Positions 7,001-64,000 of a DNA stretch of 64,000 nt are shown here, one piece after another; the stretch's first letter is position 1; every line of letters begins with the position of its first letter. The stretch comes from Obrimoposthia wandeli (taxonomy: Eukaryota). The notes under the pieces are model-generated. The model ran no database searches and had not been told where the DNA came from. It saw only the letters and a list, made by a program, of their open reading frames with translations. The position numbers and the translations under genes were made by a program. Location: positions 248,001-312,000 of the forward strand of contig CDROCS010002105.1 in assembly GCA_977020255.1 (NCBI GenBank), written 5' to 3'.

Positions 7001-10000
7001 CCGCCACCGATAAAGACGGTGATACCACTGACGGCACCATGGACATTACTCTCACTGACGGCACCAATGCCGCGGGTAATGATCAAGGTGCTGTTACGCT
7101 GAATGAAGGCGATTTAGACGTCGCGGGTGACGGCGTTAACCCAAGCGATACTGATACTTCTTACCCAGCGTCTCAATCTGGTTCATTTGTGATCAAAGCG
7201 GGTGAAGACCGTTTAGTCCCAGATTCGATTGTTATTGATCCTGCACAAGTGGATGCCTTGATGGCCGAGTTGGCGAGCGAGCTGACGTCTGCGGGGCAAG
7301 TATTAACCTTCTCACTAAATACTGACGGTGACATTGTTGGTATGTTGGGCAACACAGTGGCGTTGACGGTTGAACTATCAGCGGCGCAAAACGGTCAAGA
7401 CTTGACGGTGAGCGTTAAAATTACGCAAAACGTTCCGTTGGATCATAACGGCGCAGACGGCGCGGGTTATGTAACGTCGGCGGGTGATGACATCCACATT
7501 AACGTGCCGATCCAAGCGACCGATACCGACGGTGATGATTTAGATGCACCAGCTAATGTAGATATCACGATAACAGATGGTGAAAACCCATCGTTCGGTA
7601 TTGATTCTGGTGTGACAATTAATGAGTCAACAGACGAAAACAAGGTAATTGAAGGCCAGATCCCGCTGAATGTGGGTTCTGATGAAATCGCGAGCATCGC
7701 ATTCCAATCAAATCAACCAAGCCTCACTGGCATCACCAGCAATGGTGAAGCGACTACTTATACCGTTTCAGGTAACACAATCACGGTTGTGGATAGTGCG
7801 AAGAATCCAGTGATGATGGTGATTGTCGATACTGATGGTTCATACAAGGTGACAGTGACGGGTCCAATCGATCAAGGTGACAGTGAATCCACCAATATCG
7901 ATTTGAATGTTACCGCCACCGATAAAGACGGTGATACCACTGACGGCACCATGGACATTGCGGTACGCGGGTAATGATCAAGGCGCTGTTACGCTGAATG
8001 AAGGCGACGACGTTTGACGGCGTTAACCCAAGCGATACCGATACAAGCTACCCAGCATCTCAATCTGGTTCATTTGTGATCAAAGCGGGTGAAGATCGTT
8101 TAGTCCCAGATTCGATTGTTATTGATCCTGCTTTGCAAGGGGCGTTAATCACCGAACTGCAAAATGAACTGACCTCGGGCGGCGAGAAGCTGACGTTTGA
8201 AGTCGATGGCAGCGGTAATCTGGTTGGTAAATTGCCAAGCGGCGCTGTTGCAGTGACCGTTTCACTACAAGGTGAGCAGCAAGGCCAAGACGTAAAAGTC
8301 ACGGTGACCATCACGCAAAACGTCCCGTTGGATCATAATGGCTCAGACGGCGCGGGTTATGTGACTTCTGACAATGATGACATCCACATCAATGTGCCGG
8401 TCCAAGCCACCGATACCGATGGAGATGATTTAGAGATACCTGCCAATGTCGATATCACGATCACTGACGGCGCGAACCCCTCGTTCGGTACTGACTCTGG
8501 TGTGACGATTAATGAGTCATCACAGCAAGGCGATGTCATTTCTGGTCAGATCCCGCTGAATGTGGGCTCTGATGAAATCGCAATCATTGAATTCCAATTA
8601 AGCCAACCAAGCCTCACTGGCATCACCAGCAATGGTGAAGCGACTACTTATACCGTTTCAGGTAACACGATCACGGTTGTTGATAGTGCGAAGAACCCAG
8701 TGATGACGGTGATTGTCGATACTGATGGTTCATACAAGGTGACAGTGACGGGTCCAATCGATCAAGGTGACAGTGAATCGACTAATATCGATTTGAACGT
8801 GACTGCCACCGACAAAGATGGCGATACCACTGATGGTTCAATGGATATCACCCTCACTGACGGCACCAATGCTGCGGGGGGGGACCAAGGTGTGCTAACG
8901 CTGAACGAAGGTGATTTAGACACGTTGGGCGACGGCGTTAATTCAAGCGATACTGATACTTCTTACCCAGCGTCTCAATCTGGTTCATTTGTGATCAAAG
9001 CGGGTGAAGATCGTTTAGTCCCAGATTCGATTGTTATTGATCCTGCACAAGTGGATGCCTTGATGGCCGAGTTGGCGAGCGAGCTGACGTCTGCGGGGCA
9101 AGTATTAACCTTCTCACTAAATACTGACGGTGACATTGTTGGTATGTTGGGCAACACAGTGGCGTTGACGGTTGAACTATCAGCGGCGCAAAACGGTCAA
9201 GACTTGACGGTGAGCGTTAAAATTACGCAAAACGTTCCGTTGGATCATAACGGCGCAGACGGCGCGGGTTATGTAACGTCGGCTGGTGATGAAATCCATA
9301 TTAACGTGCCAGTGCAAGCCACCGATACCGACGGCGATGATTTAGATACCCCAGCCAATGTGGATATCACCATTACTGACGGCGCCAATCCATCGTTCGG
9401 TACTGACTCTGGCGTGACGATTAATGAGTCCACCGATAAAGGCGATGTGATTTCCGGTCAAATCCCATTGGATGTGGGCTCAGATGCGATTGATACGATT
9501 GTTTTCCAAGCGGTTCAACCAGGTTTAACTGGTATTACGAGTAATGGTGAAGCGACGACTTACACCGTTACTAGCGATACCCTGACAGTACTCGACAGTG
9601 CTGGCGATACCGTGATGACGGTGACTATCGCCACTGACGGTTCATATGACGTCACGGTCACAGGCCCAATCGACCAAGGTGACAGCGAATCCACCAATAT
9701 TGATTTGAACGTGACTGCGACCGACAAAGATGGTGATACCACTGATGGTTCAATGGATATCACTATCACTGACGGCACTAATGCCGCGGGTAATGATCAA
9801 GGCGCTGTTACGTTGACCGAAGGCGATTTAGACACGTTGGGCGACGGCGTTAATCCAAGCGATACTGATACTTCTTACCCAGCATCACAATCAGGTTCGT
9901 TTGTGATCACTGCGGGTGAAGACCGTCTTGTTCCAGATTCAATTGTAATCGACCCTGCTTTGCAAGCTGCGTTAATCACAGAGCTGCAAGCTGAACTAAC

Positions 10001-13000
10001 CTCGGGCGGACAAGCACTGACCTTTAGCGTCGATGGTGATGGCAATCTGGTTGGTAAATTGCCAAGCGGCGCTGTTGCAGTGACCGTTTCACTACAAGGT
10101 GAGCAGCAAGGCCAAGACGTAAAAGTCACGGTGACCATCACGCAGAATGTGCCGTTAGATCATAACGGTTCAAGTGATGGTGGTTACGTGACCTTTGACG
10201 GTGACAACATCCACATTAATGTCCCAGTACAAGCCACTGACACCGACGGTGATGATTTAGATGCGCCAGCTAATGTCGATATCACGATAACAGATGGTGA
10301 TAATCCATCGTTTGGTACTGATTCGGGTGTGACGATTAATGAGTCGATAGACGAAAACAAGGCAATTGAAGGTCAGATCCCGCTGAATGTGGGCTCTGAT
10401 GAAATCGCAACCATTGAATTCCAATTAAGCCAACCAAGCCTCACTGGCATCACCAGCAATGGTGAAGCGACGACGTTCAAGGTTGTGGGTAATACATTGA
10501 CGGTACTGGATAGTGCAGGCGATACCGTGATGACGGTGACTATCGCCACTGACGGTACATATGACGTCACGGTTACAGGCCCAATCGACCAAGGTGACAG
10601 CGAATCCACCAATATTGATTTGAACGTGACTGCGACCGACAAAGATGGCGATATCACTGATGGTTCAATGGATATCACCCTCACTGACGGCACTAATGCC
10701 GCGGGTAATGATCAAGGCGCTGTTACGCTGAATGAAGGCGACTTAGACGTTGCGGGTGACGGCGTTAACCCAAGCGATACCGATACAAGCTACCCAGCAT
10801 CTCAATCTGGTTCATTTGTGATCAAAGCGGGTGAAGATCGTTTAGTCCCAGATTCGATTGTTATTGATCCTGCTTTGCAAGGGGCGTTAATCACCGAACT
10901 GCAAAACGAACTGACCTCGGGCGGCGAGAAGCTGACGTTTGAAGTTGATAGCAGCGGTAATCTGGTTGGTACATTGCCGAGCGGCGTTGTAGCAGTGACC
11001 GTTTCACTACAAGGTGAGCAGCAAGGCCAAGACGTAAAAGTCACGGTGACCATCACGCAAAACGTCCCGTTGGATCATAACGGCGCAGACGGCGCGGGTT
11101 ATGTGACTTTTGACAATGATGACATCCACATCAATGTGCCGGTCCAAGCCACCGATACCGATGGCGATGATTTAGATACCCCAGCTAATGTCGATATCAC
11201 GATAACAGATGGTGATAATCCATCGTTTGGTACTGATTCGGGTGTGACGATTAATGAGTCAACAGATAAAGGCAATGCGATTGAAGGGCAGATCCCATTA
11301 AATGTAGGTTCTGACGAAATCGTAACGATTGTCTTCCAAGCGAGCCAGCCTGAATTAGCTGATTTGACTAGCAATGGCTTACCAACAACGTATGCAGTGA
11401 CAGGCAGTACCATCACCGTTTATGACAGTGCGAATAAGCCTGTAATGACAGTAACTATTGATACCGATGGATCATATAAAGTCACGGTCACTGGACCTGT
11501 TGATCAAAGTGGTGCGAGCGATAGCATCAATATCGATTTGGGGGTCACGGCAACCGATAAAGACGGTGATACAACGAATGGCTCAATGGATATCACGATC
11601 ACAGATGGTGATGATGCAGCAGGCGGTTATTCCGGCACGATTGAACTGATCGAAGGTGATCTCGATACTGACGGCAATGGTGTCGGTGGAACAGATACCT
11701 CTTATCCTGCAACGAAGTCAGGTAATTTTGAACTAACTGCCGGTGAAGATCGCTTGGTTCCTGACTCTGTTGAAGTTGATCCTGTGCAAGTCAATGCTTT
11801 GATGGTGGAATTGGCGTCTGAATTAACGTCAGGCGGCCAAGCACTAACTTTCACGTTAAATGCTGATGGTGACATTGTCGGTATGTTAAATGGCCAAGTG
11901 GCGTTGACGGTTGAACTGTCTGCGGCACAAAACGGTCAAGATCTGACGGTGACTGTCGATATCACGCAAAACGTTCCATTGGATCACAAGAATACTGGTG
12001 ATACTGCGGGTTATATTACTTCTGAAAACGATGAAATTCACATCAAGGTGCCGGTTCAAGCAACCGATACTGATGGCGATGATCTGATGAGTTCTGCCAA
12101 TGTAGGCATCATTATTAAAGATGGTGATGATCCATCATTTGGTACTGACTCTGGCATCACTGTTAATGAAACATCGAATAAAGGTGTCGCTGTAGAAGGT
12201 CAACTGAATCTGGATGTGGGTTCAGATGCTATTGCAACGCTAGTCTTTGCAGAAACTCAAACAGATCTTGAAAGCCTTACCAGCAATGGCAATCCTACAA
12301 CCTATGATGTGACAGATAACACGATCACGCTGTTTGACAGTAATGATCAAACAATCATGGTGATCACTGTTGATACCGACGGTAAATATACCGTGACGGT
12401 AACAGGTCCAATTGATCAAGAAGCGAGCTTGTCGACCGACTTGAACTTGGGTGTAATTGCGATCGATAAAGACGGTGACAGTGCATCAGGTTCAATGAAG
12501 GTCAGCATTACAGATGGTGCGAATGCGGGCGGTGGTGAAACCGCGAAGGTAGAAATCACGGAACCAGATTTAAATCCAAATGGCTACCCAGTTTCAGCTG
12601 AGACTGATATCAAGCTGAATGCGGGTGAAGATCGCCTTGATGTCACCACTGTGGGTATTGATGCCACACAACAAGCAGCATTAATTTCTGAACTGGAAGC
12701 AGAACTGACTTCTGGTGGTGAAAAACTGACATTCACACTCGAAAACGGTGTGTTAGTGGGTAAATTGCCGAACGGTGATGCAGCGGTCAGCGTGACAGTG
12801 ACGGCGGTGCAAGCTGGTCAAGATGTCACAGTGACGGTAAAAGTCGATCAACTTCTGCCTCTGGATCATAACGCATCGGGTAATAGCACGGGGTATGTCA
12901 GTGAAAATGGCGACAGTATTGCGATAAATGTTCCTCTGCAAGGCAAAGATACCGACGGTGACAGTTTAGATAACCCTGCGGTTGTGACGGTCACGATCCA

Positions 13001-53280: not shown

Positions 53281-54813
53281 CTATTTCTGATTCTTGGTTA
53301 TATTGACAGGCTGAGCCAAAGCTTTCGGAAAATGTCTACTTTCGGCTAATTGTTCAGCAACTCGAACAACATCTGCAGTGTTAAGAGCATGCGTCACTCG
53401 AAATTGTTCTTCGCGTGACAATAAGCCTGCGAATATATCTTTAGTGATCAGACCTTCTTCTACCAGTTTGTCTAAAATAGCATCTGCTGCTGATATAGCA
53501 GACGACGCTTTTACAATTTCAGATCGGGCGTAACGTTGATCTTCGAAAGAAACATCTGCAGCACGTAATGTTGGGTCATTCCCCGGAATTTGCTGTGCAC
53601 CAAAAAGAGGGTTTCCACCCACAATAGCATCATCAAATTTTGGAACAAATTGTGCCATGTGATTGATTGCTCGTTGTGTTCGGGCTACTACTTCAAACGG
53701 TTTCCACTTTGTCTTCAGCTTACTAATAAAGTGTTCTTCAAGTTTTGGCTGAGCACTTTGTTTGGTTGAACTGACGAGCCCTTTTTTGAATAAGGTTATG
53801 TCTTCAGTCATGCCATGAAGTTGGAAGTATCCATCAGGGTAGGGGGTTAATTGTGCCATACCATTGGGTGTTCCACGTTCGCCGTGAAAAATTACCTCTG
53901 GCCAAACACCTTTACATGTTGGCCATTGAGTGACATAAGCGGCTTTAAATTCAACCATGCGGTTTCGTTTAATGTTAGCCATATCATCTAATGAGCCTGT
54001 TCGATAGCCACAAGCATTGACGAGATAATCAACGGTTATACTCTCCGTTTGATGATCATTAAGTGGATCATTAAAGCGTTGAAAAGAAATATTCCAAGTT
54101 TGTTGGTTCTCACAATCGCTTTTTTCTATCTTAGTAACTTTGGCGTTAGTATAAATCTTACAGGCTGGCAATTTATCAAAAGCTAGAGACGCAGTTGCAG
54201 CAATTCTAAATATGCTTAATCCGTACTCTTGCACCATGATAATGGGGTATTTGAACGTATTTAAATTCAAATTTTTAGCCACTGGAATCATCCAATCATC
54301 CAGTGAAACTGGCATTAACGGTAAACTTTTAGCAGCCAGATTTATCAAATCTTGTTGTTGATAAACTTTAAAATATTCATCTGGGTCACCAAGTACAGCA
54401 TTGCCTTCGTCCTGCTCTATGAGTTTTTTATATACCTTTTTAAGTAACTTTAAGCGTGGTAATAATGTATCAGGATTACCTGAATCGCGTAATGGCACAG
54501 CGATAACGGTTGGCCGGATGTTTGCTGTATGAGGAAAAACACGCAGCGTATCTATCGATTGACGAAGTAATGTGACGCATTGTTCGTCCGATATCTCGCG
54601 ATACAAATTACCGCCAGCATGTAAGTGACAAATAGGAGGACCATTGACTAAGGTCGCGCCTTCTTCAATTAAAGTCACTGGTATGCCAAGTTCGGCTAAA
54701 CGTAGTGCTACGGTTGAACCTGCAACACCACCTCCTACAACACCAACGGTGATTTTAGTTTTTATTGAGCCATTGATGTTTTCAAAAGGTGTATCAGAAA
54801 CATTTACATTCAT
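53281..54813 (-). CDS. FAD-dependent oxidoreductase of unknown substrate
   Basis: VGVVGGGVAGSTVALRLAELG Rossmann motif; CHLHAGGNLYREIS. Confidence 0.85.
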   Translation of the reverse strand: MNVNVSDTPFENINGSIKTKITVGVVGGGVAGSTVALRLAELGIPVTLIEEGATLVNGPPICHLHAGGNLYREISDEQCVTLLRQSIDTLRVFPHTANIRPTVIAVPLRDSGNPDTLLPRLKLLKKVYKKLIEQDEGNAVLGDPDEYFKVYQQQDLINLAAKSLPLMPVSLDDWMIPVAKNLNLNTFKYPIIMVQEYGLSIFRIAATASLAFDKLPACKIYTNAKVTKIEKSDCENQQTWNISFQRFNDPLNDHQTESITVDYLVNACGYRTGSLDDMANIKRNRMVEFKAAYVTQWPTCKGVWPEVIFHGERGTPNGMAQLTPYPDGYFQLHGMTEDITLFKKGLVSSTKQSAQPKLEEHFISKLKTKWKPFEVVARTQRAINHMAQFVPKFDDAIVGGNPLFGAQQIPGNDPTLRAADVSFEDQRYARSEIVKASSAISAADAILDKLVEEGLITKDIFAGLLSREEQFRVTHALNTADVVRVAEQLAESRHFPKALAQPVNITKNQK

Positions 54814-55073
54814 ATTCTACTTGTCTGTGATCAAATCAAACATGGTCATATTAAGGGGTATTCTACTTGGCATTAATCATGTTTAAAACTATTTCGACAG
54901 TTGTAATTGTTAAAATATGTACTTTTAGCGGTAAGAAAACAGTATTAGCCAATAAACGTGCAGTGAAACTCGCTTTTTTTGTTTTTAATGACTTATTAGC
55001 GGTAGGGTTATTTGATGGTTGTTCATATATTAAACTTAAATAAAGTAAGTGAATACGCTGAGTGATAAGAGTT

Positions 55074-55108
55074 TCTTGTAATGCAGTCTTGTAATGCAGT
55101 CTTGTAAT
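55074..55108. repeat. 13-bp tandem repeat (2.7 copies)
   Basis: TCTTGTAATGCAG TCTTGTAATGCAG TCTTGTAAT. Confidence 0.85.
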
Positions 55109-55319
55109 AGTAGGGGTTACCTATAAGTAATTGATAGTTAAGTTAATAGCTGTAAGTTATATATGATTTCCAATTATAGGACAATAATAACTATCGTGCT
55201 GAAATAATTTAATAAAAATTGAACTATATGGAAGAAATAGAAAGTCGGCTTGTAAAGAATAAGAACTGAGCCTAAAAGTGTACATGGTAGTGGCACTAAA
55301 ATAATAAAAGGATTGAAAA

Positions 55320-56303
55320 ATGTCTAAAATGAATTACATACTTCCACTTGCATTACTCATTTCTGGTGTAGTTAATGCTGCAACAGAAAATCCGTGGTAT
55401 GCAGGTGCTCGAGTCGGTGGTACGAGTTACAGTGATTTCTCTGGTCTTGGTTCAGATCAAATTGATAAAGAGGATTGGGGTGGTGGTGTATTCTTAGGGT
55501 ATAACATTGTGCCGTGGTTTGCCGTTGAAGGTGGTTATACTTACCTTGGTGAAGCGGATATAAAAGGTACCAATGCATCAATTGAGCAGCAAGGTATTGA
55601 TCTTGTCGGTAAGTTCACCTGGAACGTAACGAACTCAATTGATTTGTTTGCTAAAGCGGGTGGTTTCTATTATTACGCTGATGGTAGCGGTCTTATTGAT
55701 GCTTCTGATGATGGTATCATTGGTACGGCAGGCGTAGGTGCTGAATACTTCTTTAATAAGAACCTATCGGCACGTCTTGAATACCAATATTATAATGATC
55801 TAGAACTTAAAGATTCAGGCATTGATGCTAGTTGGGACACACATTTCTATGGCATCAGCTTAGTGTATGGTTGGGGCGCTCCTGCACCGGTTGCAGTGGT
55901 TGAACCAGCACCTGAACCAGTACCTGTTCCAGTTATGGTTCAAGTAGAACCAATCACCGTTGCACTGCCGTTTGCGTTTGATAGCGATACGTTATCTCAG
56001 CAAGATATTGATCAGTTACAGCCTATTGCACAGCGTCTGGTTAACTTCCCAGAAACTGAGCTATTTGTTATCGGTCACACTGATAGCCGTGGTGCAGAAG
56101 CATATAACCAAAACCTATCTGAAGAACGTGCAGCAGTGGTTGCTGGTTATTTAGCTACGCATTTTGGTATTGAACCAAGCCGAATTCAGGCGCAAGGACG
56201 TGGCGAACTAGAGCCTGTTGCTGCAAATGATACTGAAGATGGTCGTGGTCAAAACCGTCGTGTAGAAGTATTTACACCTGGTTTTGAGATGGAAGGTCAG
56301 TAA
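55320..56303 (+). CDS. ompA: OmpA-family outer membrane protein
   Basis: NPWYAGARVG beta-barrel start, SARLEYQY, Pro-rich hinge (PAPEPVPVP), GHTDSRGAEAYNQNLSEERA...NRRVE peptidoglycan-binding domain. Confidence 0.92.
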   Translation: MSKMNYILPLALLISGVVNAATENPWYAGARVGGTSYSDFSGLGSDQIDKEDWGGGVFLGYNIVPWFAVEGGYTYLGEADIKGTNASIEQQGIDLVGKFTWNVTNSIDLFAKAGGFYYYADGSGLIDASDDGIIGTAGVGAEYFFNKNLSARLEYQYYNDLELKDSGIDASWDTHFYGISLVYGWGAPAPVAVVEPAPEPVPVPVMVQVEPITVALPFAFDSDTLSQQDIDQLQPIAQRLVNFPETELFVIGHTDSRGAEAYNQNLSEERAAVVAGYLATHFGIEPSRIQAQGRGELEPVAANDTEDGRGQNRRVEVFTPGFEMEGQ

Positions 56304-56385
56304 CCAATCTTTAATAGTATCTTTCTAACAATAAAAGCGCCTTAGGGTAATGCTTGCCAGTTGAACGATGCTGTTAGCCTGACAT

Positions 56386-56418
56386 AATCCGGAATCAGTT
56401 ACTGATTCCGGATTTTTT
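56386..56418. terminator. Element-borne hairpin terminator
   Basis: Perfect 13-bp stem AATCCGGAATCAG-TTA-CTGATTCCGGATT followed by Ts. Confidence 0.85.
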
Positions 56419-56470
56419 ATGCAACTGTCAGACGCTCTGCCTGCGTTTATCTTTATAGCCGTTCTGACTT

Positions 56471-57193
56471 TCAAAGTCTGGCTGAGCTTGGATTAAAGCT
56501 CCCAATCATCGGTATTGGGTTTGGGCATCCCTTCATGACATTTATAACAGTCGATTTGCTGTTAATTACAATGGGGCTGATCTCAATGGCTTTAGGGCTG
56601 GTAATACAGGCTTCTCGACATAATCCACAACCGACACAGTTCTCTTGTATGATGCTGGGTTTTTCATTCTGCCAGACTAAAGTGTCGGGGATTGGGCTGC
56701 TGCCTTTACAGGCTCCACATTCAGGTCCGGAGTAAGGTAAACATGCAGCGCTGTTGACGGTGGTTTTGGCCATAGGAGGACAATCCTTCGCATCAGGACG
56801 TTTTTTGTCTTCTGTTTCACCCGTTTTATCCTTTTCATCTATTATATTTATTGGAAATACCAGTGCTTTCTCATTACAGGCCGTTACACATGGCCAGTCA
56901 GCACAGAGGTGACAGCCCTTATTAATAATATCCATCGCTGGCGTTCCAGCAACGTCAGCACCGCGTTTCAGTGGTAACGGAAAAATGACTTGGTGTGGGC
57001 AGGCACTGATACAATCGCCGCAACGGCTGCAGTTGATTAACAAATCCAGCTCCTGCTCGGCAAAAGGAGGTCGGATCCAGCCCTTGGCTTTTTCAATCGC
57101 TTTTTGTTCGATGATATCGTTGCCAGCCTGGACCATTTTTGCAAAGCTATGTTTAAAAAAACGCCGGCGATCCATTGGATTATCTTTATTCAC
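56471..57193 (-). CDS. NapG/MauM-like 4Fe-4S ferredoxin (start probably MDRRRFF)
   Basis: IRPPFA, CSRCGDCISACP, CHLCADWPCVTAC, CVGCGLCREAC; third cluster has Ser (AGC) where a Cys is expected (CGACKGSSP). Confidence 0.85.
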   Translation of the reverse strand: MNKDNPMDRRRFFKHSFAKMVQAGNDIIEQKAIEKAKGWIRPPFAEQELDLLINCSRCGDCISACPHQVIFPLPLKRGADVAGTPAMDIINKGCHLCADWPCVTACNEKALVFPINIIDEKDKTGETEDKKRPDAKDCPPMAKTTVNSAACLPYSGPECGACKGSSPIPDTLVWQNEKPSIIQENCVGCGLCREACITSPKAIEISPIVINSKSTVINVMKGCPNPIPMIGSFNPSSARL

Positions 57194-57206
57194 GATACAG
57201 TACCTT

Positions 57207-58091
57207 CTACATTCTCATGGCCATCGGTTGTATGAGCATCCACAGATTAATGCCGGAAATTAGCACCGCAAACAACAGCATGGGCAGTAACTGTATGCCT
57301 CGGGCTGCAAATAGATGGCTTCCCCGATGACGAATGACCTGTACGGCAATAAAGAAACCAGCGGCCATTAACAGACCTTGCAAGGCGAATAACATATCTT
57401 CCGGGATCATCATTGCCATATGACGTATGTGTTTTTCCATCATGCTTAATGGTTGAGCATCAATACCCAGTGGATTGCTAAGTAATTCTGCCCAGTTACT
57501 GCTTTCACGAATAAAGTGATTCAGGTTATGGGTAATATGGTAGGAAAAGGCTAACGGCAGAGAGACAAAAGCAAAGCCGGAGAATAGTTTTTTCAAACTG
57601 ATCCCGACAGTTTCATCGCATAACTTTGACGTTAACCAGACGCTCACACCATACAATAAAATGGGCAGTAGTAAGCACACAATCAGGCCAATGGTAAAAC
57701 TCAAAAGGAGCTGGCCGCTGTCATTAATATTTTGCGCTATCTGACTGATATAGATTTGCCAGTCGTCAAGCATGGTTAAGCCGTGAAAAATGGTAAGAGC
57801 CAAAAGAATCAACATGAAGAATGCCTCATCCGTATGAGGACGGGCATCGTTGATCGCCTCGCTACTTGGTGAGCGTAGCTGCCAGCTAATATTGTGAGAG
57901 GGACAACTTTGCGTACAATTTCCGCAGGAGGTGCAATAGGTGTTTTCTTGCAAACGCCCCATGATCTGCTGGGTTGGGCAGGGGGCTATTTTCTCTGAAC
58001 CGTGATAACACTCTAATGTCTTGCGCCTAACTCGTTGACCGTGACAAAGGCTCTGCCACGGTATTGCGGTTATATTTTTTCTATCCGGCAA
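57207..58091 (-). pseudogene. 5'-truncated membrane polyferredoxin (NapH/CcoG-like 4Fe-4S binding protein)
   Basis: TLECYHG...PCP, CTSCGNCTQSCP and C-terminal TM helices are kept; the N-terminal TM part and CxxxCP motif are missing, and the first ~20 codons look like junction sequence. Confidence 0.7.
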
Positions 58092-58654
58092 GCTAGCTTT
58101 TTAAAGTCGACCTGTCCGGAAACAGGATCCCAGCAACGGTTACTGATGCCATTTGCCAGCCATTTGTTTTTCTTGGGATCGGCACTGTCTGCCACTGAAA
58201 GATTCCAAGGACCAAACATATAACCGCGCGGTACACTGTTTCGAGCGGGTTTCACTAAACTATCCGTGCCACCGACCTGTGCAGCTCTTTGTGCTTCAAC
58301 AGCGGCCGAACGGTTTGGCAGGGTTTCATGGCTGCGTAAATAGGTAACAATGGCGCTAATGTCGTCACGGTTAAGATGAGCGTAAGGGGCCATGGCAGTC
58401 CCTTTTCGACCATCACGAATTGTGGACATCAGGTATTTGTCGGAGGAAGTTGAAAGTAACTCTGGGTTGGATAAAGATGGGGAAAATCCCGGTTTGCCAA
58501 TCGCATCTGGCTGATGACAAAAAACACAGTTCTGATTATAAAGCGTTTCACCTTCTTTAATTTTTTCGCTATTTGCCGCAAAGGTAAATGAACCAAACAG
58601 CAAGTTGACACAGAAGGCCATCAAGGAGATAAAATAAGTCTTTTCCCTATTCAC
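58070..58654 (-). pseudogene. Chimeric ORF: c-type cytochrome N-terminus fused in frame to the C-terminal ~68 aa of a NapA-like molybdoenzyme
   Basis: Signal peptide + CVFCH heme motif + TAM (Met ligand), then VPRGYMFGPW...WDPVSGQVDFKKLACRIEKI, resembling the NapA end ([20 protein letters not shown]). Confidence 0.72.
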
Positions 58655-59009
58655 GATCTGCTTCTTTATGTATTTATTATATTTATTTTTAAAATAAATA
58701 TAGTAAATGTTTTGTCTTGCGCAATCTTATTGTTTTATTAGAAGTGGTTGTTGTTAAATGGAGATAGTTATTATTAAGTAAGGGGTGGTTATTTTATGAA
58801 CTGTCTAATTATAAGGTTTTTTAATTAATAACTAAGCCAGTCAGTTATATTCTCTTGTAAAAAAAGATAATCCCATATGCTTAATTATAAATTTATCAAT
58901 CAATTACAAACGATAGGTTGTTCCATGATGTTATATTTATGTTGAGATTGACTATGCTGGTAACTGATAATAGAGGGTAGACGTCTGTTTAATTTACTGA
59001 TTTTAAATT

Positions 59010-59023
59010 TTGATCTAGATCAT
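59010..59023. promoter_or_regulatory. FNR-like box
   Basis: TTGAT-CTAG-ATCAT vs TTGAT-N4-ATCAA (9/10), ~355 bp upstream of the cytochrome gene. Confidence 0.35.
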
Positions 59024-59269
59024 CTAAATGTAAACTGTTGTCTATTTGTTTATTAATGAAAGCTATTATTAAGAGTTCTTAGTATTTTTTAATTCCACCA
59101 TCAAGTTTTATTATTTATTTTTCTTTACCCCGTTGTATATTACAAAGGGTTGGAAAATACGGTTTTGTCACAAAGTTATGCTGAAGTACATCCGCTTAAT
59201 GTTAACCACAAAGCCAACCACTGCATCACCAGAGATGCAGTAAGTTGGACTGTCATGAAGTAGGGTAGA

Positions 59270-60910
59270 CTAGCCAAGTTCGAAGAATTGAACTTGTTTC
59301 AATACTTGCTTGCTAACCTGATTCATTTCATCACTGCAGCTTGCTGTTTCGGCACAAATGGTTGCTGACTTTTGAGTCAATTCTTGTACAGTATGCATGT
59401 TACCGCTGATCTCAGTCGCGACAGCACTTTGTTGCTCAGCGGCCGTGGCAATTTGCTGCGTCTGATCATTAACTTGATGAATCAAATCTAGAATGTCTTC
59501 AATCATCTGGTTACTTTCTACCACTTTCCCTTCAGCTGAAGTGGCAATTTCAGTGCTGTCAAACATCATTTTAACTGCATTTTCACAAGCTGAGCTGAGT
59601 TGATTCAGCATGGCTTCGATTTCATTTACTGATGATTGCGAACGTTGAGCAAGGGTTCTTACTTCATCGGCAACAACAGCGAATCCACGTCCTTGTTCAC
59701 CAGCTCGTGCAGCTTCAATGGCTGCATTGAGGGCAAGCAGATTTGTTTGTTCAGCAATATTACGAATCACATCGAGGATACTTTCGATTCTTGTTGATTC
59801 GTCTTTTAGCAGGCCAACGACATTGGCAGTTTCATTCAGATTACCAACCAGTTTAATAACGGCGTCTTTGGTCTGATTTGAAGAGTCGATCCCTTTGTTC
59901 GCCAGCACCGCCATGGTATCTGAAGTTTGCGCAGATTCAGAAGTATTGTCGGCAATATTCATGCTGGTGATCGTCAATTCTTCAATGGCCGTTACAACCT
60001 GTACAGTGTGATCTGACACTTCAGAAGCTGAAATTTGAATATTGTTATTGGCTTCTAGTAGTGTTTGACTGTTGGTATCGACAATCTGCGTCGAGCTATT
60101 GATAGCAGAAAGCGTATTGTTCAGGTTTTGAATTGTGGTGTTCAATGCACGGCTGAGTTCGGCTATTTCATCTTTTCCGTCAACAATACACGACACATTC
60201 AGTTTGCCTTTGGCCATTGCGTGCGCAGTATCCATTACATGCTTAATACTATTAGTAATTTTTTTTGATAAGAATTGACTAAAGATTACAGCGATGGCAA
60301 CTGAAATAATGATGGATAAATAAAAGACATAATTCGCATAACTGATTGCATTTTTGGTGTCCTTATTTGCGGTATCTGCTGCGCTATAATTCATTTTTTG
60401 AAAATCATGAAAGAATTCGTTAAGGGCGGAATATGCATCGCGGTAATTTGAGAATACAGAAAAAGGGGCTTTATTATCTGGTGCATTTTCCATTGCTTTA
60501 ATGAAAGCCGATGAATTGTTCTGGAAAGTTGTTACTACTTGTCTAAGTTTAATCGTAGTCGTTGCATCACCGGCAAAGTCTTTGGATAAGGCATTCAATA
60601 ACTGTGGAGTATCCGCCATGTTTTTATTAATGCTCGACACATAGCCATCAACCTGATTCGAAAGGTTCAACAAGTAAGCAATCTGCAATCCTCGAACATT
60701 CAACATAATCTCGGTTTGCGTATCTTTGACTTCTTCAAATAACAGTGAAACTGCGAAGTTTTGTGTATAAAACTGATTGAAATTGTTCGCAATTCGATCA
60801 TTAGCTGATTTTATAAAAAGTAATGATATAGCAAAAATGGATAAAATCACGCCAATCAAAAGATAGAACTTTGTTCTTATTGTTAAGTTATTTATGTTCA
60901 TAACAGCCAA
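59270..60910 (-). CDS. Methyl-accepting chemotaxis protein
   Basis: Two TM segments with a helical periplasmic domain, HAMP ([11 protein letters not shown]), [34 protein letters not shown]. Confidence 0.96.
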
Positions 60911-61190
60911 CTATAAAGAGTGGTTAATCCAAGAGTGAGTGGTTGAAAATTGCACTACACATATATGTTACAGCTTAAAACTGCGAGATTTGAGCGCGGT
61001 ATTCGCTAGCGGTATGCAGTTATAATGTGAGGGTATGCTCTCTTGTTGTTATAGCGGCCGTAATATTAATAACTTTAGAGATACTTTAAAGGGTAAAGCA
61101 ATGCCGCTCACGTTAAGTGAACGGCATCACGCCTTAGGGCGCTTTTAATGACGCATTAACTCAATGTTAGTCGCAAAGCTAGTCGTAATT

Positions 61191-61982
61191 TTATAACTTA
61201 CAGCTTTGTCGTTTTGTGTTCGTTGCCGGTAATTGAGCTATTTCAGCTTTTAAATCATCAATACGCGTTGAATGGGAAGGGTGAGTTGATAGTAATTCAG
61301 GAGGTTGATTTCCTCCCGATGCTTTCGCCATGTTTTGCCATAGTTCAACACTCTGGTATGGGTCAAACCCTGACTCAGCCATTAACCTTAACCCAATAAT
61401 ATCTGATTCAGATTCTTGTGCTCGTCCGTAAGGCATAAGTACGCCATATTGCACACCTAAGCCTAAACCTGCCATAGCAGCACCTTGGTATTGTGTACCG
61501 CTCATTGCAATATTGGTAAGCCCTAAACCTGCGTTTGCGAGCTGGCTACGAGATAACCGTTCATTACTATGCTGAGCCATTACATGACCGATCTCATGGC
61601 CAATAACCGTTGCTAACTGATCTTGGTTTTTAGCTACGTTAAGTAACCCAGTATAGACGCCAATTTTACCACCAGGAAGTGCAAATGCATTAACTTGGTC
61701 GCTATCAAAAACAACCACTTCCCATTGGTCAAAATCAGGCTGTGGGCCTAATTGGGTTGTGATTGCGCTTGTAACACATTGAACATATTGGTTAGTTTTA
61801 GCATCGGTGTTGATCTTCTCTTGCTTTTTCAACTCTTCAAATGACTGAGCACCAAGCTGAGACATATCATTTCCTGAAAAAAGCAAAACTTGTTGTCGGC
61901 CAGTGGGAGAGCTTGAGCACGCAGTAAGAGTAAGTGACGATGCGACTAATGCTGTTATAAACAGAGGATGCTGTAATTTCAT
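61191..61982 (-). CDS. M48-family Zn metallopeptidase lipoprotein
   Basis: Start ATG 61982 with GGAGG-like RBS; lipobox LTAC; VNAFALPGG, GHEIGH (HExxH), ESESD, LSTHP. Confidence 0.92.
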   Translation of the reverse strand: MKLQHPLFITALVASSLTLTACSSSPTGRQQVLLFSGNDMSQLGAQSFEELKKQEKINTDAKTNQYVQCVTSAITTQLGPQPDFDQWEVVVFDSDQVNAFALPGGKIGVYTGLLNVAKNQDQLATVIGHEIGHVMAQHSNERLSRSQLANAGLGLTNIAMSGTQYQGAAMAGLGLGVQYGVLMPYGRAQESESDIIGLRLMAESGFDPYQSVELWQNMAKASGGNQPPELLSTHPSHSTRIDDLKAEIAQLPATNTKRQSCKL

Positions 61983-62177
61983 ATGAATGACTCCTTCCAT
62001 TCCTTAATTATAAATTATGTATCTATTATGTCGTGACTATCTATTCAAGTACCAGATTAATTGCTCATATTTAATTGTTATTTATATGCAAATTAAATCG
62101 CTGGTGGGTGATTTGATGGATTTAAGAAGGTTAACTGGTATTCTATCTACAGAGTAGACCGAACGTTAGGTAAATTA

Positions 62178-62612
62178 ATGACAATTTGGAAGAAAGCTTT
62201 TACGCTCGACACCCTAAACCAAACATCATCGAATACACTGGTTGAACATTTGGGGATTAAATATTCATCGTTTGATGACACTAGCCTATCGGCAACGATG
62301 CCTGTGGAACCTAAAACACATCAACCGCTTGGTATGTTGCATGGTGGGGCATCGGTGGTATTAGCTGAAACATTAGGCTCAATTGCTGCAAATATGTGTG
62401 TTGATGAGAAGAAATATTGTGTTGGCTTAGATATTAATGCCAATCACATTCGCGCTATGCGAACAGGCAATGTGACGGGAAAAGCCACACCACTTCATAT
62501 TGGTATTACAACGCAAGTGTGGCAAATTGAAATTAGTGACGAAAGAGAGCGACTTGTTTGTACTAGTCGAATTACTATGGCAGTTATGCAACATAAAAAG
62601 AAAGAAAAATAA
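62178..62612 (+). CDS. menI: Hotdog-fold thioesterase (MenI/YdiI-like)
   Basis: HQPLGMLHGGASVVLAETLGS, GLDINANHIRA. Confidence 0.8.
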   Translation: MTIWKKAFTLDTLNQTSSNTLVEHLGIKYSSFDDTSLSATMPVEPKTHQPLGMLHGGASVVLAETLGSIAANMCVDEKKYCVGLDINANHIRAMRTGNVTGKATPLHIGITTQVWQIEISDERERLVCTSRITMAVMQHKKKEK

Positions 62613-62849
62613 ATGTTAATGACATTTTCTGAAGGTAAAATCATAGCCAATCAACATGAGCTTGTTATACGTATTGAAAGCGCTGCAAAAGTGACACTGC
62701 AAGCGCAAGTTGATGAAGTTACACTGATTGGCGGTGCAAATGTAATAACAGCGACAGGAAGTGGTATAAATTGGTCTGTACGGTTAGACAATGAAGAGCA
62801 GTTAAAGGAATTGTCTAACGAAATTGGAATCGCTATACAAAAATATTAA
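62613..62849 (+). CDS. DUF3389-like small protein
   Basis: FSEGKIIANQHELVIR...LQAQVDEVTLIGGANVITATGS. Confidence 0.7.
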   Translation: MLMTFSEGKIIANQHELVIRIESAAKVTLQAQVDEVTLIGGANVITATGSGINWSVRLDNEEQLKELSNEIGIAIQKY

Positions 62850-62874
62850 TGTCGTTATATAAGCAGCTATATAG

Positions 62875-62897
62875 AAAGAGGTATTATTTACCTCTTT
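62875..62897. terminator. Short hairpin after the thioesterase operon
   Basis: AAAGAGGTA-TTATT-TACCTCTTT. Confidence 0.55.
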
Positions 62898-63186
62898 AAA
62901 ATCACTCCACCGGCACCGCCGCCAGTGACGATTTGAAAACATCCGCTTTTAACCCTATGAAATTTTAGGTACAAGATTCGCTTTCGCCCAACACGTAGTC
63001 GAATCTTTCGTTCTTGCTTGAATGAAATTATTTATTTTTAATAAATCACTAGTATTGCTATGCATTTTATTGCACTCTTATTGATGTCAATGAATTAAAA
63101 ATATAATAGATTAATATTTTATTCTTAAGTGGAATAATAAGTATTTAAAGTTGCCAGTAATGCTAGGTTAGTATAAGGATATTATA

Positions 63187-64000
63187 ATGAATAAGCCCCA
63201 ACTACAGCGAATTGCTGAAAGCGCTTATCAAGCTATGTTTAGTCAAAGGCCTGAAGTGAGTAATATTCAAGAAACATTCTATGGTTGGGTTGTCTTCCTT
63301 ATTTCATCTAAAGGAAGAGTTGTTGTGAAATTTTCTCGTGAAATTGGACGGATAGAGAAAGAGGTAACAGGTCTAGCATTATTGAAAAAGAAAGTGACTT
63401 GTCCTGTGCCTGAAGTGTATTTTTTTGGTCGTTCAGAAGGCCACGATTACATGCTGATGGAATGGCTAGAAGGCATATCTGCTTATGAATTACCCGATAA
63501 CCCCAAAGCAATAGAAACGTTCCGAGAAGATTACACAAACATATTAATTGCATTGCATGAACACACTGACTCCCGAGGATTTGAAGCGACACCTGAACAG
63601 TTTGAACCTTCTTTAATCGATGCTTTTGATAAGTGGATGTATCCTGTTTTAAGGTATGTATTAAGTTCTTGTTCACCGTTTTCCCGTGAATTAAAAGATG
63701 CGTACGCGCTATTGTGGGAGAAAAAAACAGAAATATTAATGCCCATCAATAATCAGTCCTCTTTTGTTCATGATGATTGTCACATTGCTAATGTGCTTTT
63801 TGATCCCAAAACATACAAAATTTCGGGGTTACTCGATCCTTGCGATGTCGGCTTTAAACATAAAGAATTTGATATTTTTCATTTGTTTGATGTAAGAGAA
63901 GATTTGAAATTAGTTGATCGCTACCATGAAAAATCTCCATTAATTGAAGGGATTGAAGTTAGAAGATATTTTTTAGGATTGTGGGAAGACGCCAAACATA
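63187..64000 (+). CDS. Aminoglycoside phosphotransferase/choline-kinase-like protein, 3'-truncated by window edge
   Basis: Not in ORF track; MNKPQLQRIAE...VVVKFS...PVPEVY...MLMEWLEG...FVHDDCHIANVLFD...LLDPCD (HxDxxxxN catalytic loop), open to the end. Confidence 0.85.
   Translation, partial: MNKPQLQRIAESAYQAMFSQRPEVSNIQETFYGWVVFLISSKGRVVVKFSREIGRIEKEVTGLALLKKKVTCPVPEVYFFGRSEGHDYMLMEWLEGISAYELPDNPKAIETFREDYTNILIALHEHTDSRGFEATPEQFEPSLIDAFDKWMYPVLRYVLSSCSPFSRELKDAYALLWEKKTEILMPINNQSSFVHDDCHIANVLFDPKTYKISGLLDPCDVGFKHKEFDIFHLFDVREDLKLVDRYHEKSPLIEGIEVRRYFLGLWEDAKH

What the first reader, a model, noticed from the sequence alone, without database searches (positions are those of the whole stretch)
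58070..58654. In-frame cytochrome c::NapA-like tail chimera marks a collapsed, uncharacterised molybdoenzyme operon
Seen: a secreted CxxCH cytochrome domain ending ...AAVEAQRAAQ runs without a stop (junction near 58277) into VGGTDSLVKPARNSVPRGYMFGPW...NRCWDPVSGQVDFKKLACRIEKI. Established: NapA ends ...[22 protein letters not shown], the last strand of the molybdopterin dinucleotide-binding domain. Inference: a multi-kb deletion removed the rest of the cytochrome, any intervening genes and about 90% of a Mo-bisPGD enzyme. The tail is clearly divergent from canonical NapA and the operon layout (cyt c, Mo enzyme, polyferredoxin, NapG-like) is not napFDAGHBC, so intact relatives may encode an undescribed terminal reductase.
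Basis: partly seen in the sequence, partly recalled or inferred. Interest (0 to 1): 0.75.

Follow-up and report, generated by a model that had tools for sequence, protein, structure and literature searches.

The report
Deletion scar of a Nap-like operon
The 194-codon gene is a dead fusion left when a 2.8-kb deletion joined the front of a cytochrome c gene to the last 68 codons of a molybdenum enzyme gene; this is ordinary gene decay, but the destroyed operon belongs to a widespread, highly conserved, still unnamed relative of periplasmic nitrate reductase.

Summary
Observation confirmed. ORF 58070-58654(-) is an in-frame chimera. Residues 1-126 are 93% identical to residues 1-126 of a 216-aa diheme cytochrome c. 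Residues 127-194 are 68/68 identical to residues 832-899 of the adjacent 899-aa Tat-exported Mo-bisPGD enzyme of Photobacterium frigidiphilum/indicum/profundum.

The junction lies in a 7-nt microhomology (GCACAGG). About 2,780 nt are missing there.

Against the intact 12-kb cluster of a 92%-identical relative, the window has also lost:
- a DUF255/DsbD-like gene (about 2.3 kb);
- four whole genes plus the 5' half of a 508-aa membrane Fe-S gene (about 3.7 kb);
- the end of the NapG-like gene plus most of napC (about 0.65 kb), which makes a second, out-of-frame chimera.

An independent assembly of the probable source run spans all junctions. A second sample carries the 3.7-kb junction. Near-identical strains in two other samples keep the intact genes, so the decay is real and recent.

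The parent enzyme keeps NapA's Cys-Met and Arg. It falls outside the NapA, Nas and Fdh clades, scores 336 bits against NapA's cut-off of 904, occurs in at least 278 species-level genomes, and has no specific name in any source or paper I found.

The scar is ordinary; the family is worth study.

The parts
58070..58654 (-). Chimeric 194-aa ORF (cytochrome c N-terminal domain fused in frame to the molybdoenzyme C-terminal tail)
58277..58654 (-). Residues 1-126: signal peptide plus the first heme domain (CVFCH) of a 216-aa diheme class-I cytochrome c; the second heme domain is deleted
58073..58276 (-). Residues 127-194: the last 68 codons of an 899-aa Tat-exported Mo-bisPGD enzyme (end of the molybdopterin dinucleotide-binding domain), 68/68 aa identical to L001
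   Evidence: seven synonymous and no non-synonymous differences
58276..58282 (-). Junction J2: 7-nt microhomology GCACAGG, present at both break points in the intact relative; about 2,780 nt missing (L001 8150/8160 to 10930/10939)
58655..59160 (-). Native upstream/promoter region of the cytochrome gene; aligns with L001 7270-7777 (84% nt identity over the whole block window 58273-59160 = L001 7270-8159)
   Evidence: only weak promoter-like matches
59161..59191 (.). Junction J1: 31-nt filler with no match in the relative, at the place where a 784-aa DUF255/DsbD_N thioredoxin-like gene (about 2.3 kb) lies in L001 and L006
57207..58091 (-). 294-aa ORF. It is the 3' fragment (codons 238-508) of a 508-aa NapH-like membrane Fe-S gene, read through from 23 codons of former molybdoenzyme 3' end and intergenic DNA. 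It has no native start.
58013..58022 (-). Junction J3: imperfect microhomology (AAGnCAT); about 3,700 nt missing. Lost: NapG-like 201 aa, NapH-like 354 aa, ferredoxin 210 aa, unknown 194 aa, and the first 237 codons of the 508-aa gene.
   Evidence: spanned by a contig of a second sample (X3)
56471..57193 (-). 240-aa NapG-like Tat ferredoxin ORF whose last ~29 residues are an out-of-frame read of the napC 3' end (a second chimera)
56555..56563 (-). Junction J4: about 9-nt imperfect overlap; about 650 nt missing (the last 13 codons of the NapG-like gene plus most of a 224-aa NapC/NirT tetraheme cytochrome gene)
   Evidence: contig 19 of X4 carries 639 extra nt here
56479..56563 (-). Remnant of the napC 3' end (matches L001 17040-17124, 93% nt)

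Best explanation
The ORF is a pseudogene-type fusion scar. A Photobacterium of the profundum/indicum/frigidiphilum group once carried a ~12-kb respiratory cluster. Its genes were:
- a DUF255/DsbD-like protein;
- a diheme cytochrome c;
- an 899-aa Tat-exported Nap-like Mo-bisPGD enzyme;
- a NapG-like and a NapH-like protein;
- a ferredoxin;
- a 194-aa membrane-anchored beta-sandwich protein;
- a 508-aa NapH-like membrane Fe-S protein;
- a NapG-like Tat ferredoxin;
- NapC/NirT.

In this strain, four deletions removed about 9.4 kb of it. Three of them lie between short direct repeats of 7-9 nt. This points to replication slippage or illegitimate recombination, which is an inference.

The deletion between two GCACAGG heptamers happened to join codon 126 of the cytochrome to codon 832 of the enzyme in frame. 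That produced a 194-codon ORF behind the old promoter and signal peptide.

Shown: the junctions, the microhomologies, the intact form in relatives, and the presence of the deleted form in two samples.

Inferred: the product, if made, would be at most a monoheme cytochrome c domain carrying 68 residues of a beta-barrel fragment that cannot bind the cofactor, and the whole pathway is non-functional in this strain.

The events are recent. The surviving fragments have no stop codons or frameshifts, and locally >=99%-identical strains still have the intact genes.
For: - Synteny and four gaps against L001 (Photobacterium, about 92% nt identity).
- Base-level junctions with microhomology.
- Protein identities of 93% (residues 1-126) and 100% (residues 127-194).
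- Intact nine- to ten-gene cluster in L001, L002, L003, L004 and in most of 80 further loci.
- No protein with the chimera's architecture.
- Neither junction sequence searched (J2, J3) occurs in any of the large contig collections scanned: J2 is absent from genome contigs, and J2 and J3 are absent from JGI metagenome contigs.
- Logan contig of run X1 (7,699 nt, 2 differences) spans all junctions.
- An X3 contig spans J3 with 0 differences.
- Loose ends of X2 and X4 at 58022, 58071, 58276 and 58282 continue into the sequence that L001 has there. X4 contig 19 carries 639 extra nt at J4 (one search compared).
- The remnants are open, with dN/dS of 0.13-0.20.
Against: - Run X1 is probably the sample the window was assembled from, so J2 and J4 are confirmed only by a second assembler, not by a second sample.
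- Only contigs were available, not raw reads.
- In X3 two contigs end on either side of J2 (58274 and 58282) without bridging it, so the state of J2 there is unknown.
- The promoter and signal peptide are intact and the frame is open, so expression of a monoheme cytochrome with some residual use cannot be excluded. No RNA data were laid.
- J1 has a 31-nt filler and no microhomology, so it may have a different history.
Confidence: 0.92

Rival explanations
1. Assembly artefact: the assembler collapsed an intact operon at short repeats, so the chimera does not exist in any cell.
For: The junction sequences tested (J2, J3) were found in no other collection. J2 and J4 are bridged only in the run that is probably the window's own source.
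Against: The repeats are 7-9 nt, far below any assembler's word length. A different assembler (Logan) rebuilt the same 3.1 kb in one 7.7-kb contig at even depth 11.6. A separate sample (X3, invertebrate gut metagenome) has a 318-nt contig across J3 with no mismatch. No X1 contig continues into the intact sequence.
Confidence: 0.04
2. Neofunctionalised gene: the fusion is retained because a secreted monoheme cytochrome c with a new C-terminal extension is useful.
For: The frame is open, the native upstream region and signal peptide are retained, the heme motif is intact, and the tail has 0 non-synonymous changes.
Against: - The synonymous-only divergence of the tail is what purifying selection before a recent deletion would leave.
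- The architecture is unique to this strain lineage.
- The rest of the operon was shredded by three more deletions, one giving an out-of-frame fusion.
- A 68-residue piece of the cofactor-binding barrel has no known independent fold (inference).
Confidence: 0.04
3. The short form is ancestral, and the relatives gained the extra DNA by insertion.
For: None beyond the logical possibility. J1 (the DUF255/DsbD-like gene) could be an insertion in the relatives, because it lacks microhomology.
Against: The 'insertions' would have to restore complete, conserved reading frames of genes found in the same order in at least 278 species-level genomes of several proteobacterial classes. Homologues of the DUF255/DsbD-like gene lie beside the cluster in distant lineages too.
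Confidence: 0.01

Closest known systems
Periplasmic nitrate reductase NapA with NapB, NapC, NapG, NapH and NapD
   Same: - The parent enzyme has a Tat signal (SRRNFLKG) and an N-terminal 4Fe-4S motif.
- It has the three Pfam domains PF04879, PF00384 and PF01568.
- The Mo-ligand motif RMCMTSAV aligns with Cys140-Met141 of D. desulfuricans NapA.
- Asp155, Arg354 and the Lys after the fourth cluster cysteine are kept.
- NapG-, NapH- and NapC-like partners are present.
(residue roles from PMC13223375)
   Different: - It scores 336 bits against the NapA equivalog cut-off of 904.
- It is about 35-40% identical to NapA-clade representatives.
- It forms its own clade outside NapA, Nas and Fdh (SH-aLRT 90 for the clade, 97 for the branch separating the rest).
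- The channel residues Glu156 and Asp355 are Thr and Phe, and Met308 is Ile.
- No NapB or NapD is present.
- The electron partner is a class-I (cbb3/c4-type) diheme cytochrome.
- There are two NapGH-like modules plus an unknown beta-sandwich protein.

Gene-fusion scars from microhomology-mediated deletion in bacterial pseudogenisation
   Same: The junctions lie at short direct repeats, the fusion is in frame by chance, several lesions hit one dispensable operon, and the flanking genes are intact.
   Different: Nothing essential differs. The notable point is only that four lesions accumulated with no point-mutational decay in between.
NosGH / NapGH quinol dehydrogenase modules
   Same: Fer4_5 membrane proteins are paired with periplasmic poly-ferredoxins, one of which carries a Tat signal.
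   Different: All scores are below the NapG, NapH and MauM/N cut-offs. The 508-aa member carries a large extra C-terminal membrane domain. Function was not tested.

Membership tests
NapA (periplasmic nitrate reductase catalytic subunit) | Score at or above the curated NCBIfam equivalog cut-off (NF010055 904 bits; TIGR01706 930.55 bits) | tested here: not met
   The parent enzyme L001:8443-11142 scores 336 and 319 bits. The window ORF's tail scores only E=0.13. A true NapA representative (P0296) scores 1546 bits.
NapA (periplasmic nitrate reductase catalytic subunit) | Placement inside the NapA clade of the Mo-bisPGD tree | tested here: not met
   FastTree (106 rows) and IQ-TREE (55 rows) both give a separate clade with P0241-P0243. 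A 97* branch splits off the set holding NapA, Nas and Fdh.
NapA (periplasmic nitrate reductase catalytic subunit) | Cysteine ligand to Mo in the RxCMxSAV motif, the 4Fe-4S motif and the Tat signal | tested here: met
   RMCMTSAV is invariant in the family and aligns to Cys140-Met141 of 2jio. The N-terminus reads SRRNFLKG...CPYCGVGCG. This holds for the parent enzyme only; all of it is deleted in the window.
NapA (periplasmic nitrate reductase catalytic subunit) | Charged substrate-channel residues Asp155, Glu156, Arg354 and Asp355 (D. desulfuricans numbering, PMC13223375) | tested here: inconclusive
   Asp155 and Arg354 are kept, while Glu156 is Thr and Asp355 is Phe, in the phmmer alignment to 2jio. 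This rests on an alignment, not on a structure.
NapA (periplasmic nitrate reductase catalytic subunit) | NapB diheme partner and NapD chaperone in the cluster | tested here: not met
   The Pfam listings of the called genes in L001-L005 show neither family. The diheme protein is PF13442/PF00034.
NapA (periplasmic nitrate reductase catalytic subunit) | Nitrate reductase activity | not testable with these tools
   No biochemical or genetic data were found for any member.
Mo/W-bisPGD (MopB / DMSO reductase) superfamily | Domains PF04879 + PF00384 + PF01568 | tested here: met
   This is met for the parent enzyme. The window ORF keeps only the last 68 residues, and Pfam detects no such domain in it, so the window ORF itself is not a functional member.
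Class I c-type cytochrome | CxxCH heme motif within a PF13442/PF00034 domain, after a signal peptide | tested here: met
   Residues 31-109 match at E=2.6e-12 and 1.3e-10, with CVFCH at 43-47. One of the two ancestral domains remains.
NapG / MauM ferredoxin | Score at or above the NCBIfam cut-offs (NapG 269 bits; MauM/NapG subfamily 178.85 bits) | tested here: not met
   The window's 240-aa ORF scores 86.7 and 55.1 bits. It is NapG-like only.

The most novel reading that the evidence does not exclude
The destroyed operon is a member of a functionally undescribed, ancient and widespread periplasmic molybdoenzyme system. Its core is a class-I diheme cytochrome c, a ~900-aa Nap-like Mo-bisPGD enzyme, NapGH-like modules and a small copper-protein-like beta-sandwich protein.

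The enzyme is a separate lineage from NapA, Nas and Fdh, with an altered substrate channel. It may reduce an oxyanion other than nitrate, or reduce nitrate by a chain not yet described.

It is common in marine sediment, vent and oxygen-minimum-zone Proteobacteria, where pipelines currently label it narB, napA or 'selenocysteine-containing dehydrogenase'.
Probability: 0.5. Interest if true: 0.7.

Novelty: new member of a known kind. Interest (0 to 1): 0.42.

Why it matters
The chimera matters little in itself. It is a clean, datable example of an operon being dismantled by several short-repeat deletions before any point mutation accumulates, and it warns that an open, signal-peptide-bearing ORF can be a scar.

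The parent system matters more.

- The catalytic subunit is at least 79% identical across the Gamma- and Alphaproteobacteria and the Rhodocyclaceae and is found in at least 278 species-level genomes.
- These include cultivable Photobacterium profundum and Shewanella gelidimarina/benthica, as well as sulfur oxidisers and oxygen-minimum-zone MAGs.
- It has no curated family model, no specific name and no paper that I could find.
- Automated annotation files it under assimilatory or periplasmic nitrate reductase, which may distort nitrogen-cycle gene counts in marine metagenomes.
- Because cultivable, genetically tractable hosts carry it, its substrate can be tested directly.

Tried and rejected
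- Pfam and NCBIfam on the chimera alone give only the cytochrome domain plus a sub-threshold NapA C-terminal touch. That was not enough, so I moved to relatives.
- Exact searches for the J2 junction in 185,579 species genomes and in JGI metagenomes, and for J3 in the metagenomes, found nothing. The deleted allele is therefore rare, and the window's strain is not a species representative carrying it.
- Seven literature searches and five papers named no such lineage. The Bacillus azotoformans and Sporomusa ovata Nap clusters that looked similar are canonical NapA systems with NapB/NapD or NapC/NapD.
- I considered whether the unknown 194-aa operon protein is a TorD/NapD-type chaperone, and rejected this. 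The AlphaFold model (pLDDT 88) is a membrane-anchored beta-sandwich closest to the copper proteins CrdA, PmoD and FetP.
- I looked for the J1 filler inside the deleted DNA and found no match.
- Neighbouring genes outside the cluster gave no functional hint. They differ in every lineage.
- The first-stage idea that 56338-61139 is a transposase-less cargo element was not pursued beyond noting that the whole stretch is syntenic with the chromosomal locus of relatives.

Full report
**1. What is in the window**

ORF 58070-58654 on the minus strand has 194 codons and a GTG start. It begins with a Sec-type signal peptide and holds one CxxCH motif. Pfam sees a single class-I cytochrome c domain at residues 31-109 and nothing after it. 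The NCBIfam NapA model touches residues 136-194 with its last 49 positions, only at E=0.13. Downstream on the same strand lie a 294-aa ORF with one ferredoxin motif and several hydrophobic segments (57207-58091) and a 240-aa NapG-like ORF with a twin-arginine signal (56471-57193). The ompA-like gene follows on the other strand.

**2. Relatives of the two halves**

A search of 5.8 billion proteins with the whole ORF returned 474 hits. Nearly all are about 216-aa proteins with two cytochrome c domains. Among the 120 listed, none covers more than 81% of the query and most stop at 65%, which is residue 126.

The best hit, P0001, is 117/126 identical over residues 1-126. It then continues with a second heme domain (CATCH at 139-143) that the window lacks. 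P0001 is encoded on a Photobacterium contig, L001, whose product names and near-identical copies point to P. frigidiphilum and P. indicum.

In L001 the cytochrome gene is followed 15 nt later by an 899-aa protein with the three domains of a Mo/W-bisPGD enzyme. Residues 127-194 of the window ORF are 68/68 identical to residues 832-899 of that protein.

**3. The locus is syntenic, with four gaps**

BLASTN of window 54000-64000 against L001 gives collinear blocks at 84-96% identity. They cover the 4HBT, DUF3389, M48 peptidase and MCP genes on one side and ompA on the other. Between MCP and ompA, L001 carries a 12-kb cluster of which the window keeps about 2.7 kb. One search shows each junction base by base.

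- **J1 (window 59160/59192).** A 784-aa DUF255/DsbD_N thioredoxin-like gene (about 2.3 kb) is replaced by 31 nt that match nothing in the relative.
- **J2 (58276-58282).** The heptamer GCACAGG occurs at both L001 break points (about 8153-8159 and 10933-10939). About 2,780 nt are missing. Both break points sit at codon starts, which is why the fusion is in frame.
- **J3 (58013-58022).** About 3,700 nt are missing between imperfect repeats (AAGnCAT).
- **J4 (56555-56563).** About 650 nt are missing between a 9-nt imperfect overlap.

J3 removed four whole genes: a NapG-like gene (201 aa), a NapH-like gene (354 aa), a ferredoxin (210 aa) and an unknown gene (194 aa). It also removed the first 237 codons of a 508-aa NapH-like membrane Fe-S gene. 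The window's 294-aa ORF is the rest of that gene, read through from former intergenic DNA.

J4 removed the last 13 codons of the NapG-like gene and most of a NapC/NirT tetraheme cytochrome gene. The NapG-like ORF now ends in about 29 residues read out of frame from the napC remnant. Its length of 240 aa equals the ancestral length only by coincidence.

**4. Real or artefact**

All runs that could be laid are kept as contigs.

- Run X1 holds 98% of the sampled words and is probably the window's own source. It contains one 7,699-nt contig covering 56300-59400 with two differences, so a second assembler rebuilt all junctions.
- Run X3 is an invertebrate gut metagenome whose pieces are at least 99% alike. 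It has a 318-nt contig across J3 with no difference. Two of its contigs end at 58274 and 58282, on either side of J2, so J2 is unresolved there.
- Runs X2 (sediment) and X4 (food metagenome) carry pieces 95-100% alike. These break at 58022, 58071, 58276 and 58282. Compared, their loose ends are the sequences that L001 has at those points.
- X4 contig 19 has 639 extra nt at J4.

Strains nearly identical to the window at this locus therefore still have the intact genes. The deleted form exists in at least two samples. The repeats are far too short to mislead an assembler.

The exact J2 junction is absent from 185,579 species genomes and from JGI metagenome contigs. J3 is absent from the latter.

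**5. Age**

All surviving fragments are free of stops and frameshifts. Against L001, their dN/dS is 0.20 (cytochrome part), 0 (tail, 7 synonymous changes), 0.13 (508-aa fragment) and 0.16 (NapG-like). The flanking genes give 0.02-0.06 for MCP, M48, 4HBT and DUF3389, and 0.13 for ompA. The slight rise is compatible with a short period of relaxed selection. Together with section 4, it places the deletions within the species.

**6. What the operon was**

The 899-aa enzyme has a twin-arginine signal and a CxxCxxxC 4Fe-4S motif. Its nearest solved relatives are periplasmic nitrate reductases (2jio, E=5e-76), followed by formate dehydrogenases. In the alignment to D. desulfuricans NapA:

- the Mo-ligand Cys140 and Met141 are kept (RMCMTSAV), as are Asp155, Arg354 and the Lys after the fourth cluster cysteine;
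- Glu156 is Thr, Asp355 is Phe and Met308 is Ile.

These come, with residue roles from PMC13223375. The motif is invariant in the family. It resembles Nap/Nas (RLCM[AS]SAV) and not Fdh (RLCH).

Its NapA equivalog score is 336 bits against a cut-off of 904. A search of 1.84 billion 50%-identity cluster representatives finds only three full-length neighbours, at 53, 50 and 40% identity. Everything after them is at 39% or less.

In a FastTree of 106 rows and an IQ-TREE of 55 rows, the family plus those three forms its own clade (support 92 and 90). A branch with support 93 (FastTree) or 97 (IQ-TREE) sets apart the group that holds NapA (labelled by P0296, 1546 bits), the Nas-like clade and Fdh (labelled by P0367, 812 bits). 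The root is an unnamed outgroup, so I claim only 'outside the NapA, Nas and Fdh clades', not a branching order.

**7. Distribution and conservation**

The top 120 of more than 5,000 hits are 81-100% identical. 278 stretches in species-level genomes encode it. They include:

- Photobacterium indicum (100%) and P. profundum (99%, also strain SS9, CAG22523, on a 2.24-Mb record);
- Shewanella gelidimarina, S. benthica and S. abyssi (91-92%);
- Colwellia, Motiliproteus and Thiohalobacter;
- Thioalkalispiraceae, Candidatus Parabeggiatoa and Sulfuriflexus;
- Rhodocyclaceae, Hyphomicrobiaceae and Kiloniellaceae;
- many MAGs whose names point to vents, sediments and oxygen-minimum zones.

A tblastn matrix over 85 loci shows the same gene order almost everywhere that the contig is long enough: diheme cytochrome, enzyme, NapG-like, NapH-like, often the extra ferredoxin, the unknown protein of about 200 aa, often the 508-aa protein, the Tat NapG-like protein, and napC either upstream or downstream. 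A DUF255/DsbD-like gene is adjacent in many loci.

Even the 50-53% relatives keep the cytochrome, enzyme, NapG-like, NapH-like and small-unknown core. No NapB or NapD appears in any listing.

The source names are generic or contradictory: 'molybdopterin-dependent oxidoreductase', 'ferredoxin-nitrate reductase', 'anaerobic selenocysteine-containing dehydrogenase' and 'nitrate reductase NapA'.

**8. The unknown 194-aa operon protein**

This protein is deleted in the window. An alignment of 51 homologues has invariant His24-His25 just after the predicted signal/anchor. The AlphaFold model (pLDDT 88) is an N- and C-terminally helix-anchored beta-sandwich. Its best PDB matches are the copper proteins CrdA, PmoD and FetP/P19, and DUF4426, at E=1e-4 to 1e-3 with 14-16% identity. 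It is not a TorD/NapD-type chaperone. A metal-binding role is a lead only.

**9. Likely working of the intact system (inference)**

Quinol would be oxidised by NapC and/or by the two NapGH-like modules. Electrons would pass through the diheme cytochrome to the 4Fe-4S cluster and the Mo-bisPGD site of the periplasmic enzyme, which would reduce an oxyanion. Nitrate is the default guess from the Cys-Met-Arg site. The altered channel leaves another substrate open, and so does the existence of two canonical napA genes in S. gelidimarina (Simpson et al. 2010, as cited in PMC13223375). None of this operates in the window's strain.

**10. Literature**

Seven full-text searches and the DMSO-reductase-family phylogenies I could read list no such lineage (PMC7331816, PMC10100899, PMC12769810, PMC13223375). 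The Nap variants of Bacillus azotoformans (PMC3475470) and Sporomusa ovata (PMC12780646) are canonical NapA systems. Absence from an open-access library is not proof that the family is undescribed.

**11. Earlier notes of this scan**

These notes are unchecked. If both are from this strain, it may be shedding parts of its anaerobic respiration. I could not test this from this window. A first-stage note reads 56338-61139 as a transposase-less cargo element. The synteny with relatives speaks against that reading.

**12. Verdict**

The feature itself is an ordinary, recent deletion scar. Its value is as a pointer to an unnamed, widespread Nap-like enzyme system.

Noticed in passing
window 56471-57193 (-), junction at 56555-56563: The NapG-like ORF is a second chimera. 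Its last ~29 residues are an out-of-frame read of the napC 3' remnant, and its length of 240 aa equals the ancestral length only by chance.
   Followed up: yes
L001:13600-14184 and 50 homologues (alignment A1): The conserved ~200-aa operon protein has no Pfam family. Its model is a membrane-anchored beta-sandwich resembling the copper proteins CrdA, PmoD and FetP, with an invariant His-His pair at the mature N-terminus. That is odd in a molybdoenzyme operon.
   Followed up: partly
L001:4992-7346(-); homologues beside the cluster in L009, L059, L071, L073, L075, L082 and others: A DUF255 thioredoxin / six-hairpin / DsbD_N protein of about 780 aa recurs next to the cluster in distant lineages (25-43% identity). 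It is probably an accessory of the system. It is absent at window 59161-59191.
   Followed up: partly
window 56816 (L001 16098): There is a 42-nt in-frame length difference in the acidic linker of the NapG-like gene. Run X4 has a third variant of 28 other letters at 56810-56814, so the linker is variable between strains.
   Followed up: no
window 56381-56438: A 13-bp-stem terminator-like palindrome (56386-56414) lies behind ompA. A second X1 contig (996 nt, 5 differences) matches only these 58 nt on the opposite strand, so a similar hairpin element lies elsewhere in the genome.
   Followed up: no
window 58274-58282 in run X3: Two low-depth contigs of the invertebrate gut sample end on either side of junction J2 with no loose ends, while J3 is bridged. 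This may be chance, or a graph branch caused by a second allele at J2.
   Followed up: no
window 56471-58654 versus flanks: Synonymous divergence from L001 is lower in the operon remnants (dS 0.11-0.20) than in the flanking M48, 4HBT and ompA genes (0.34-0.36). This may reflect recombination or transfer of the cluster within the genus.
   Followed up: no
80 loci L006-L085: The catalytic subunit is 79-100% identical across proteobacterial classes, while its operon partners are only 40-75% identical. This implies unusually strong constraint on the enzyme, or its recent spread.
   Followed up: partly
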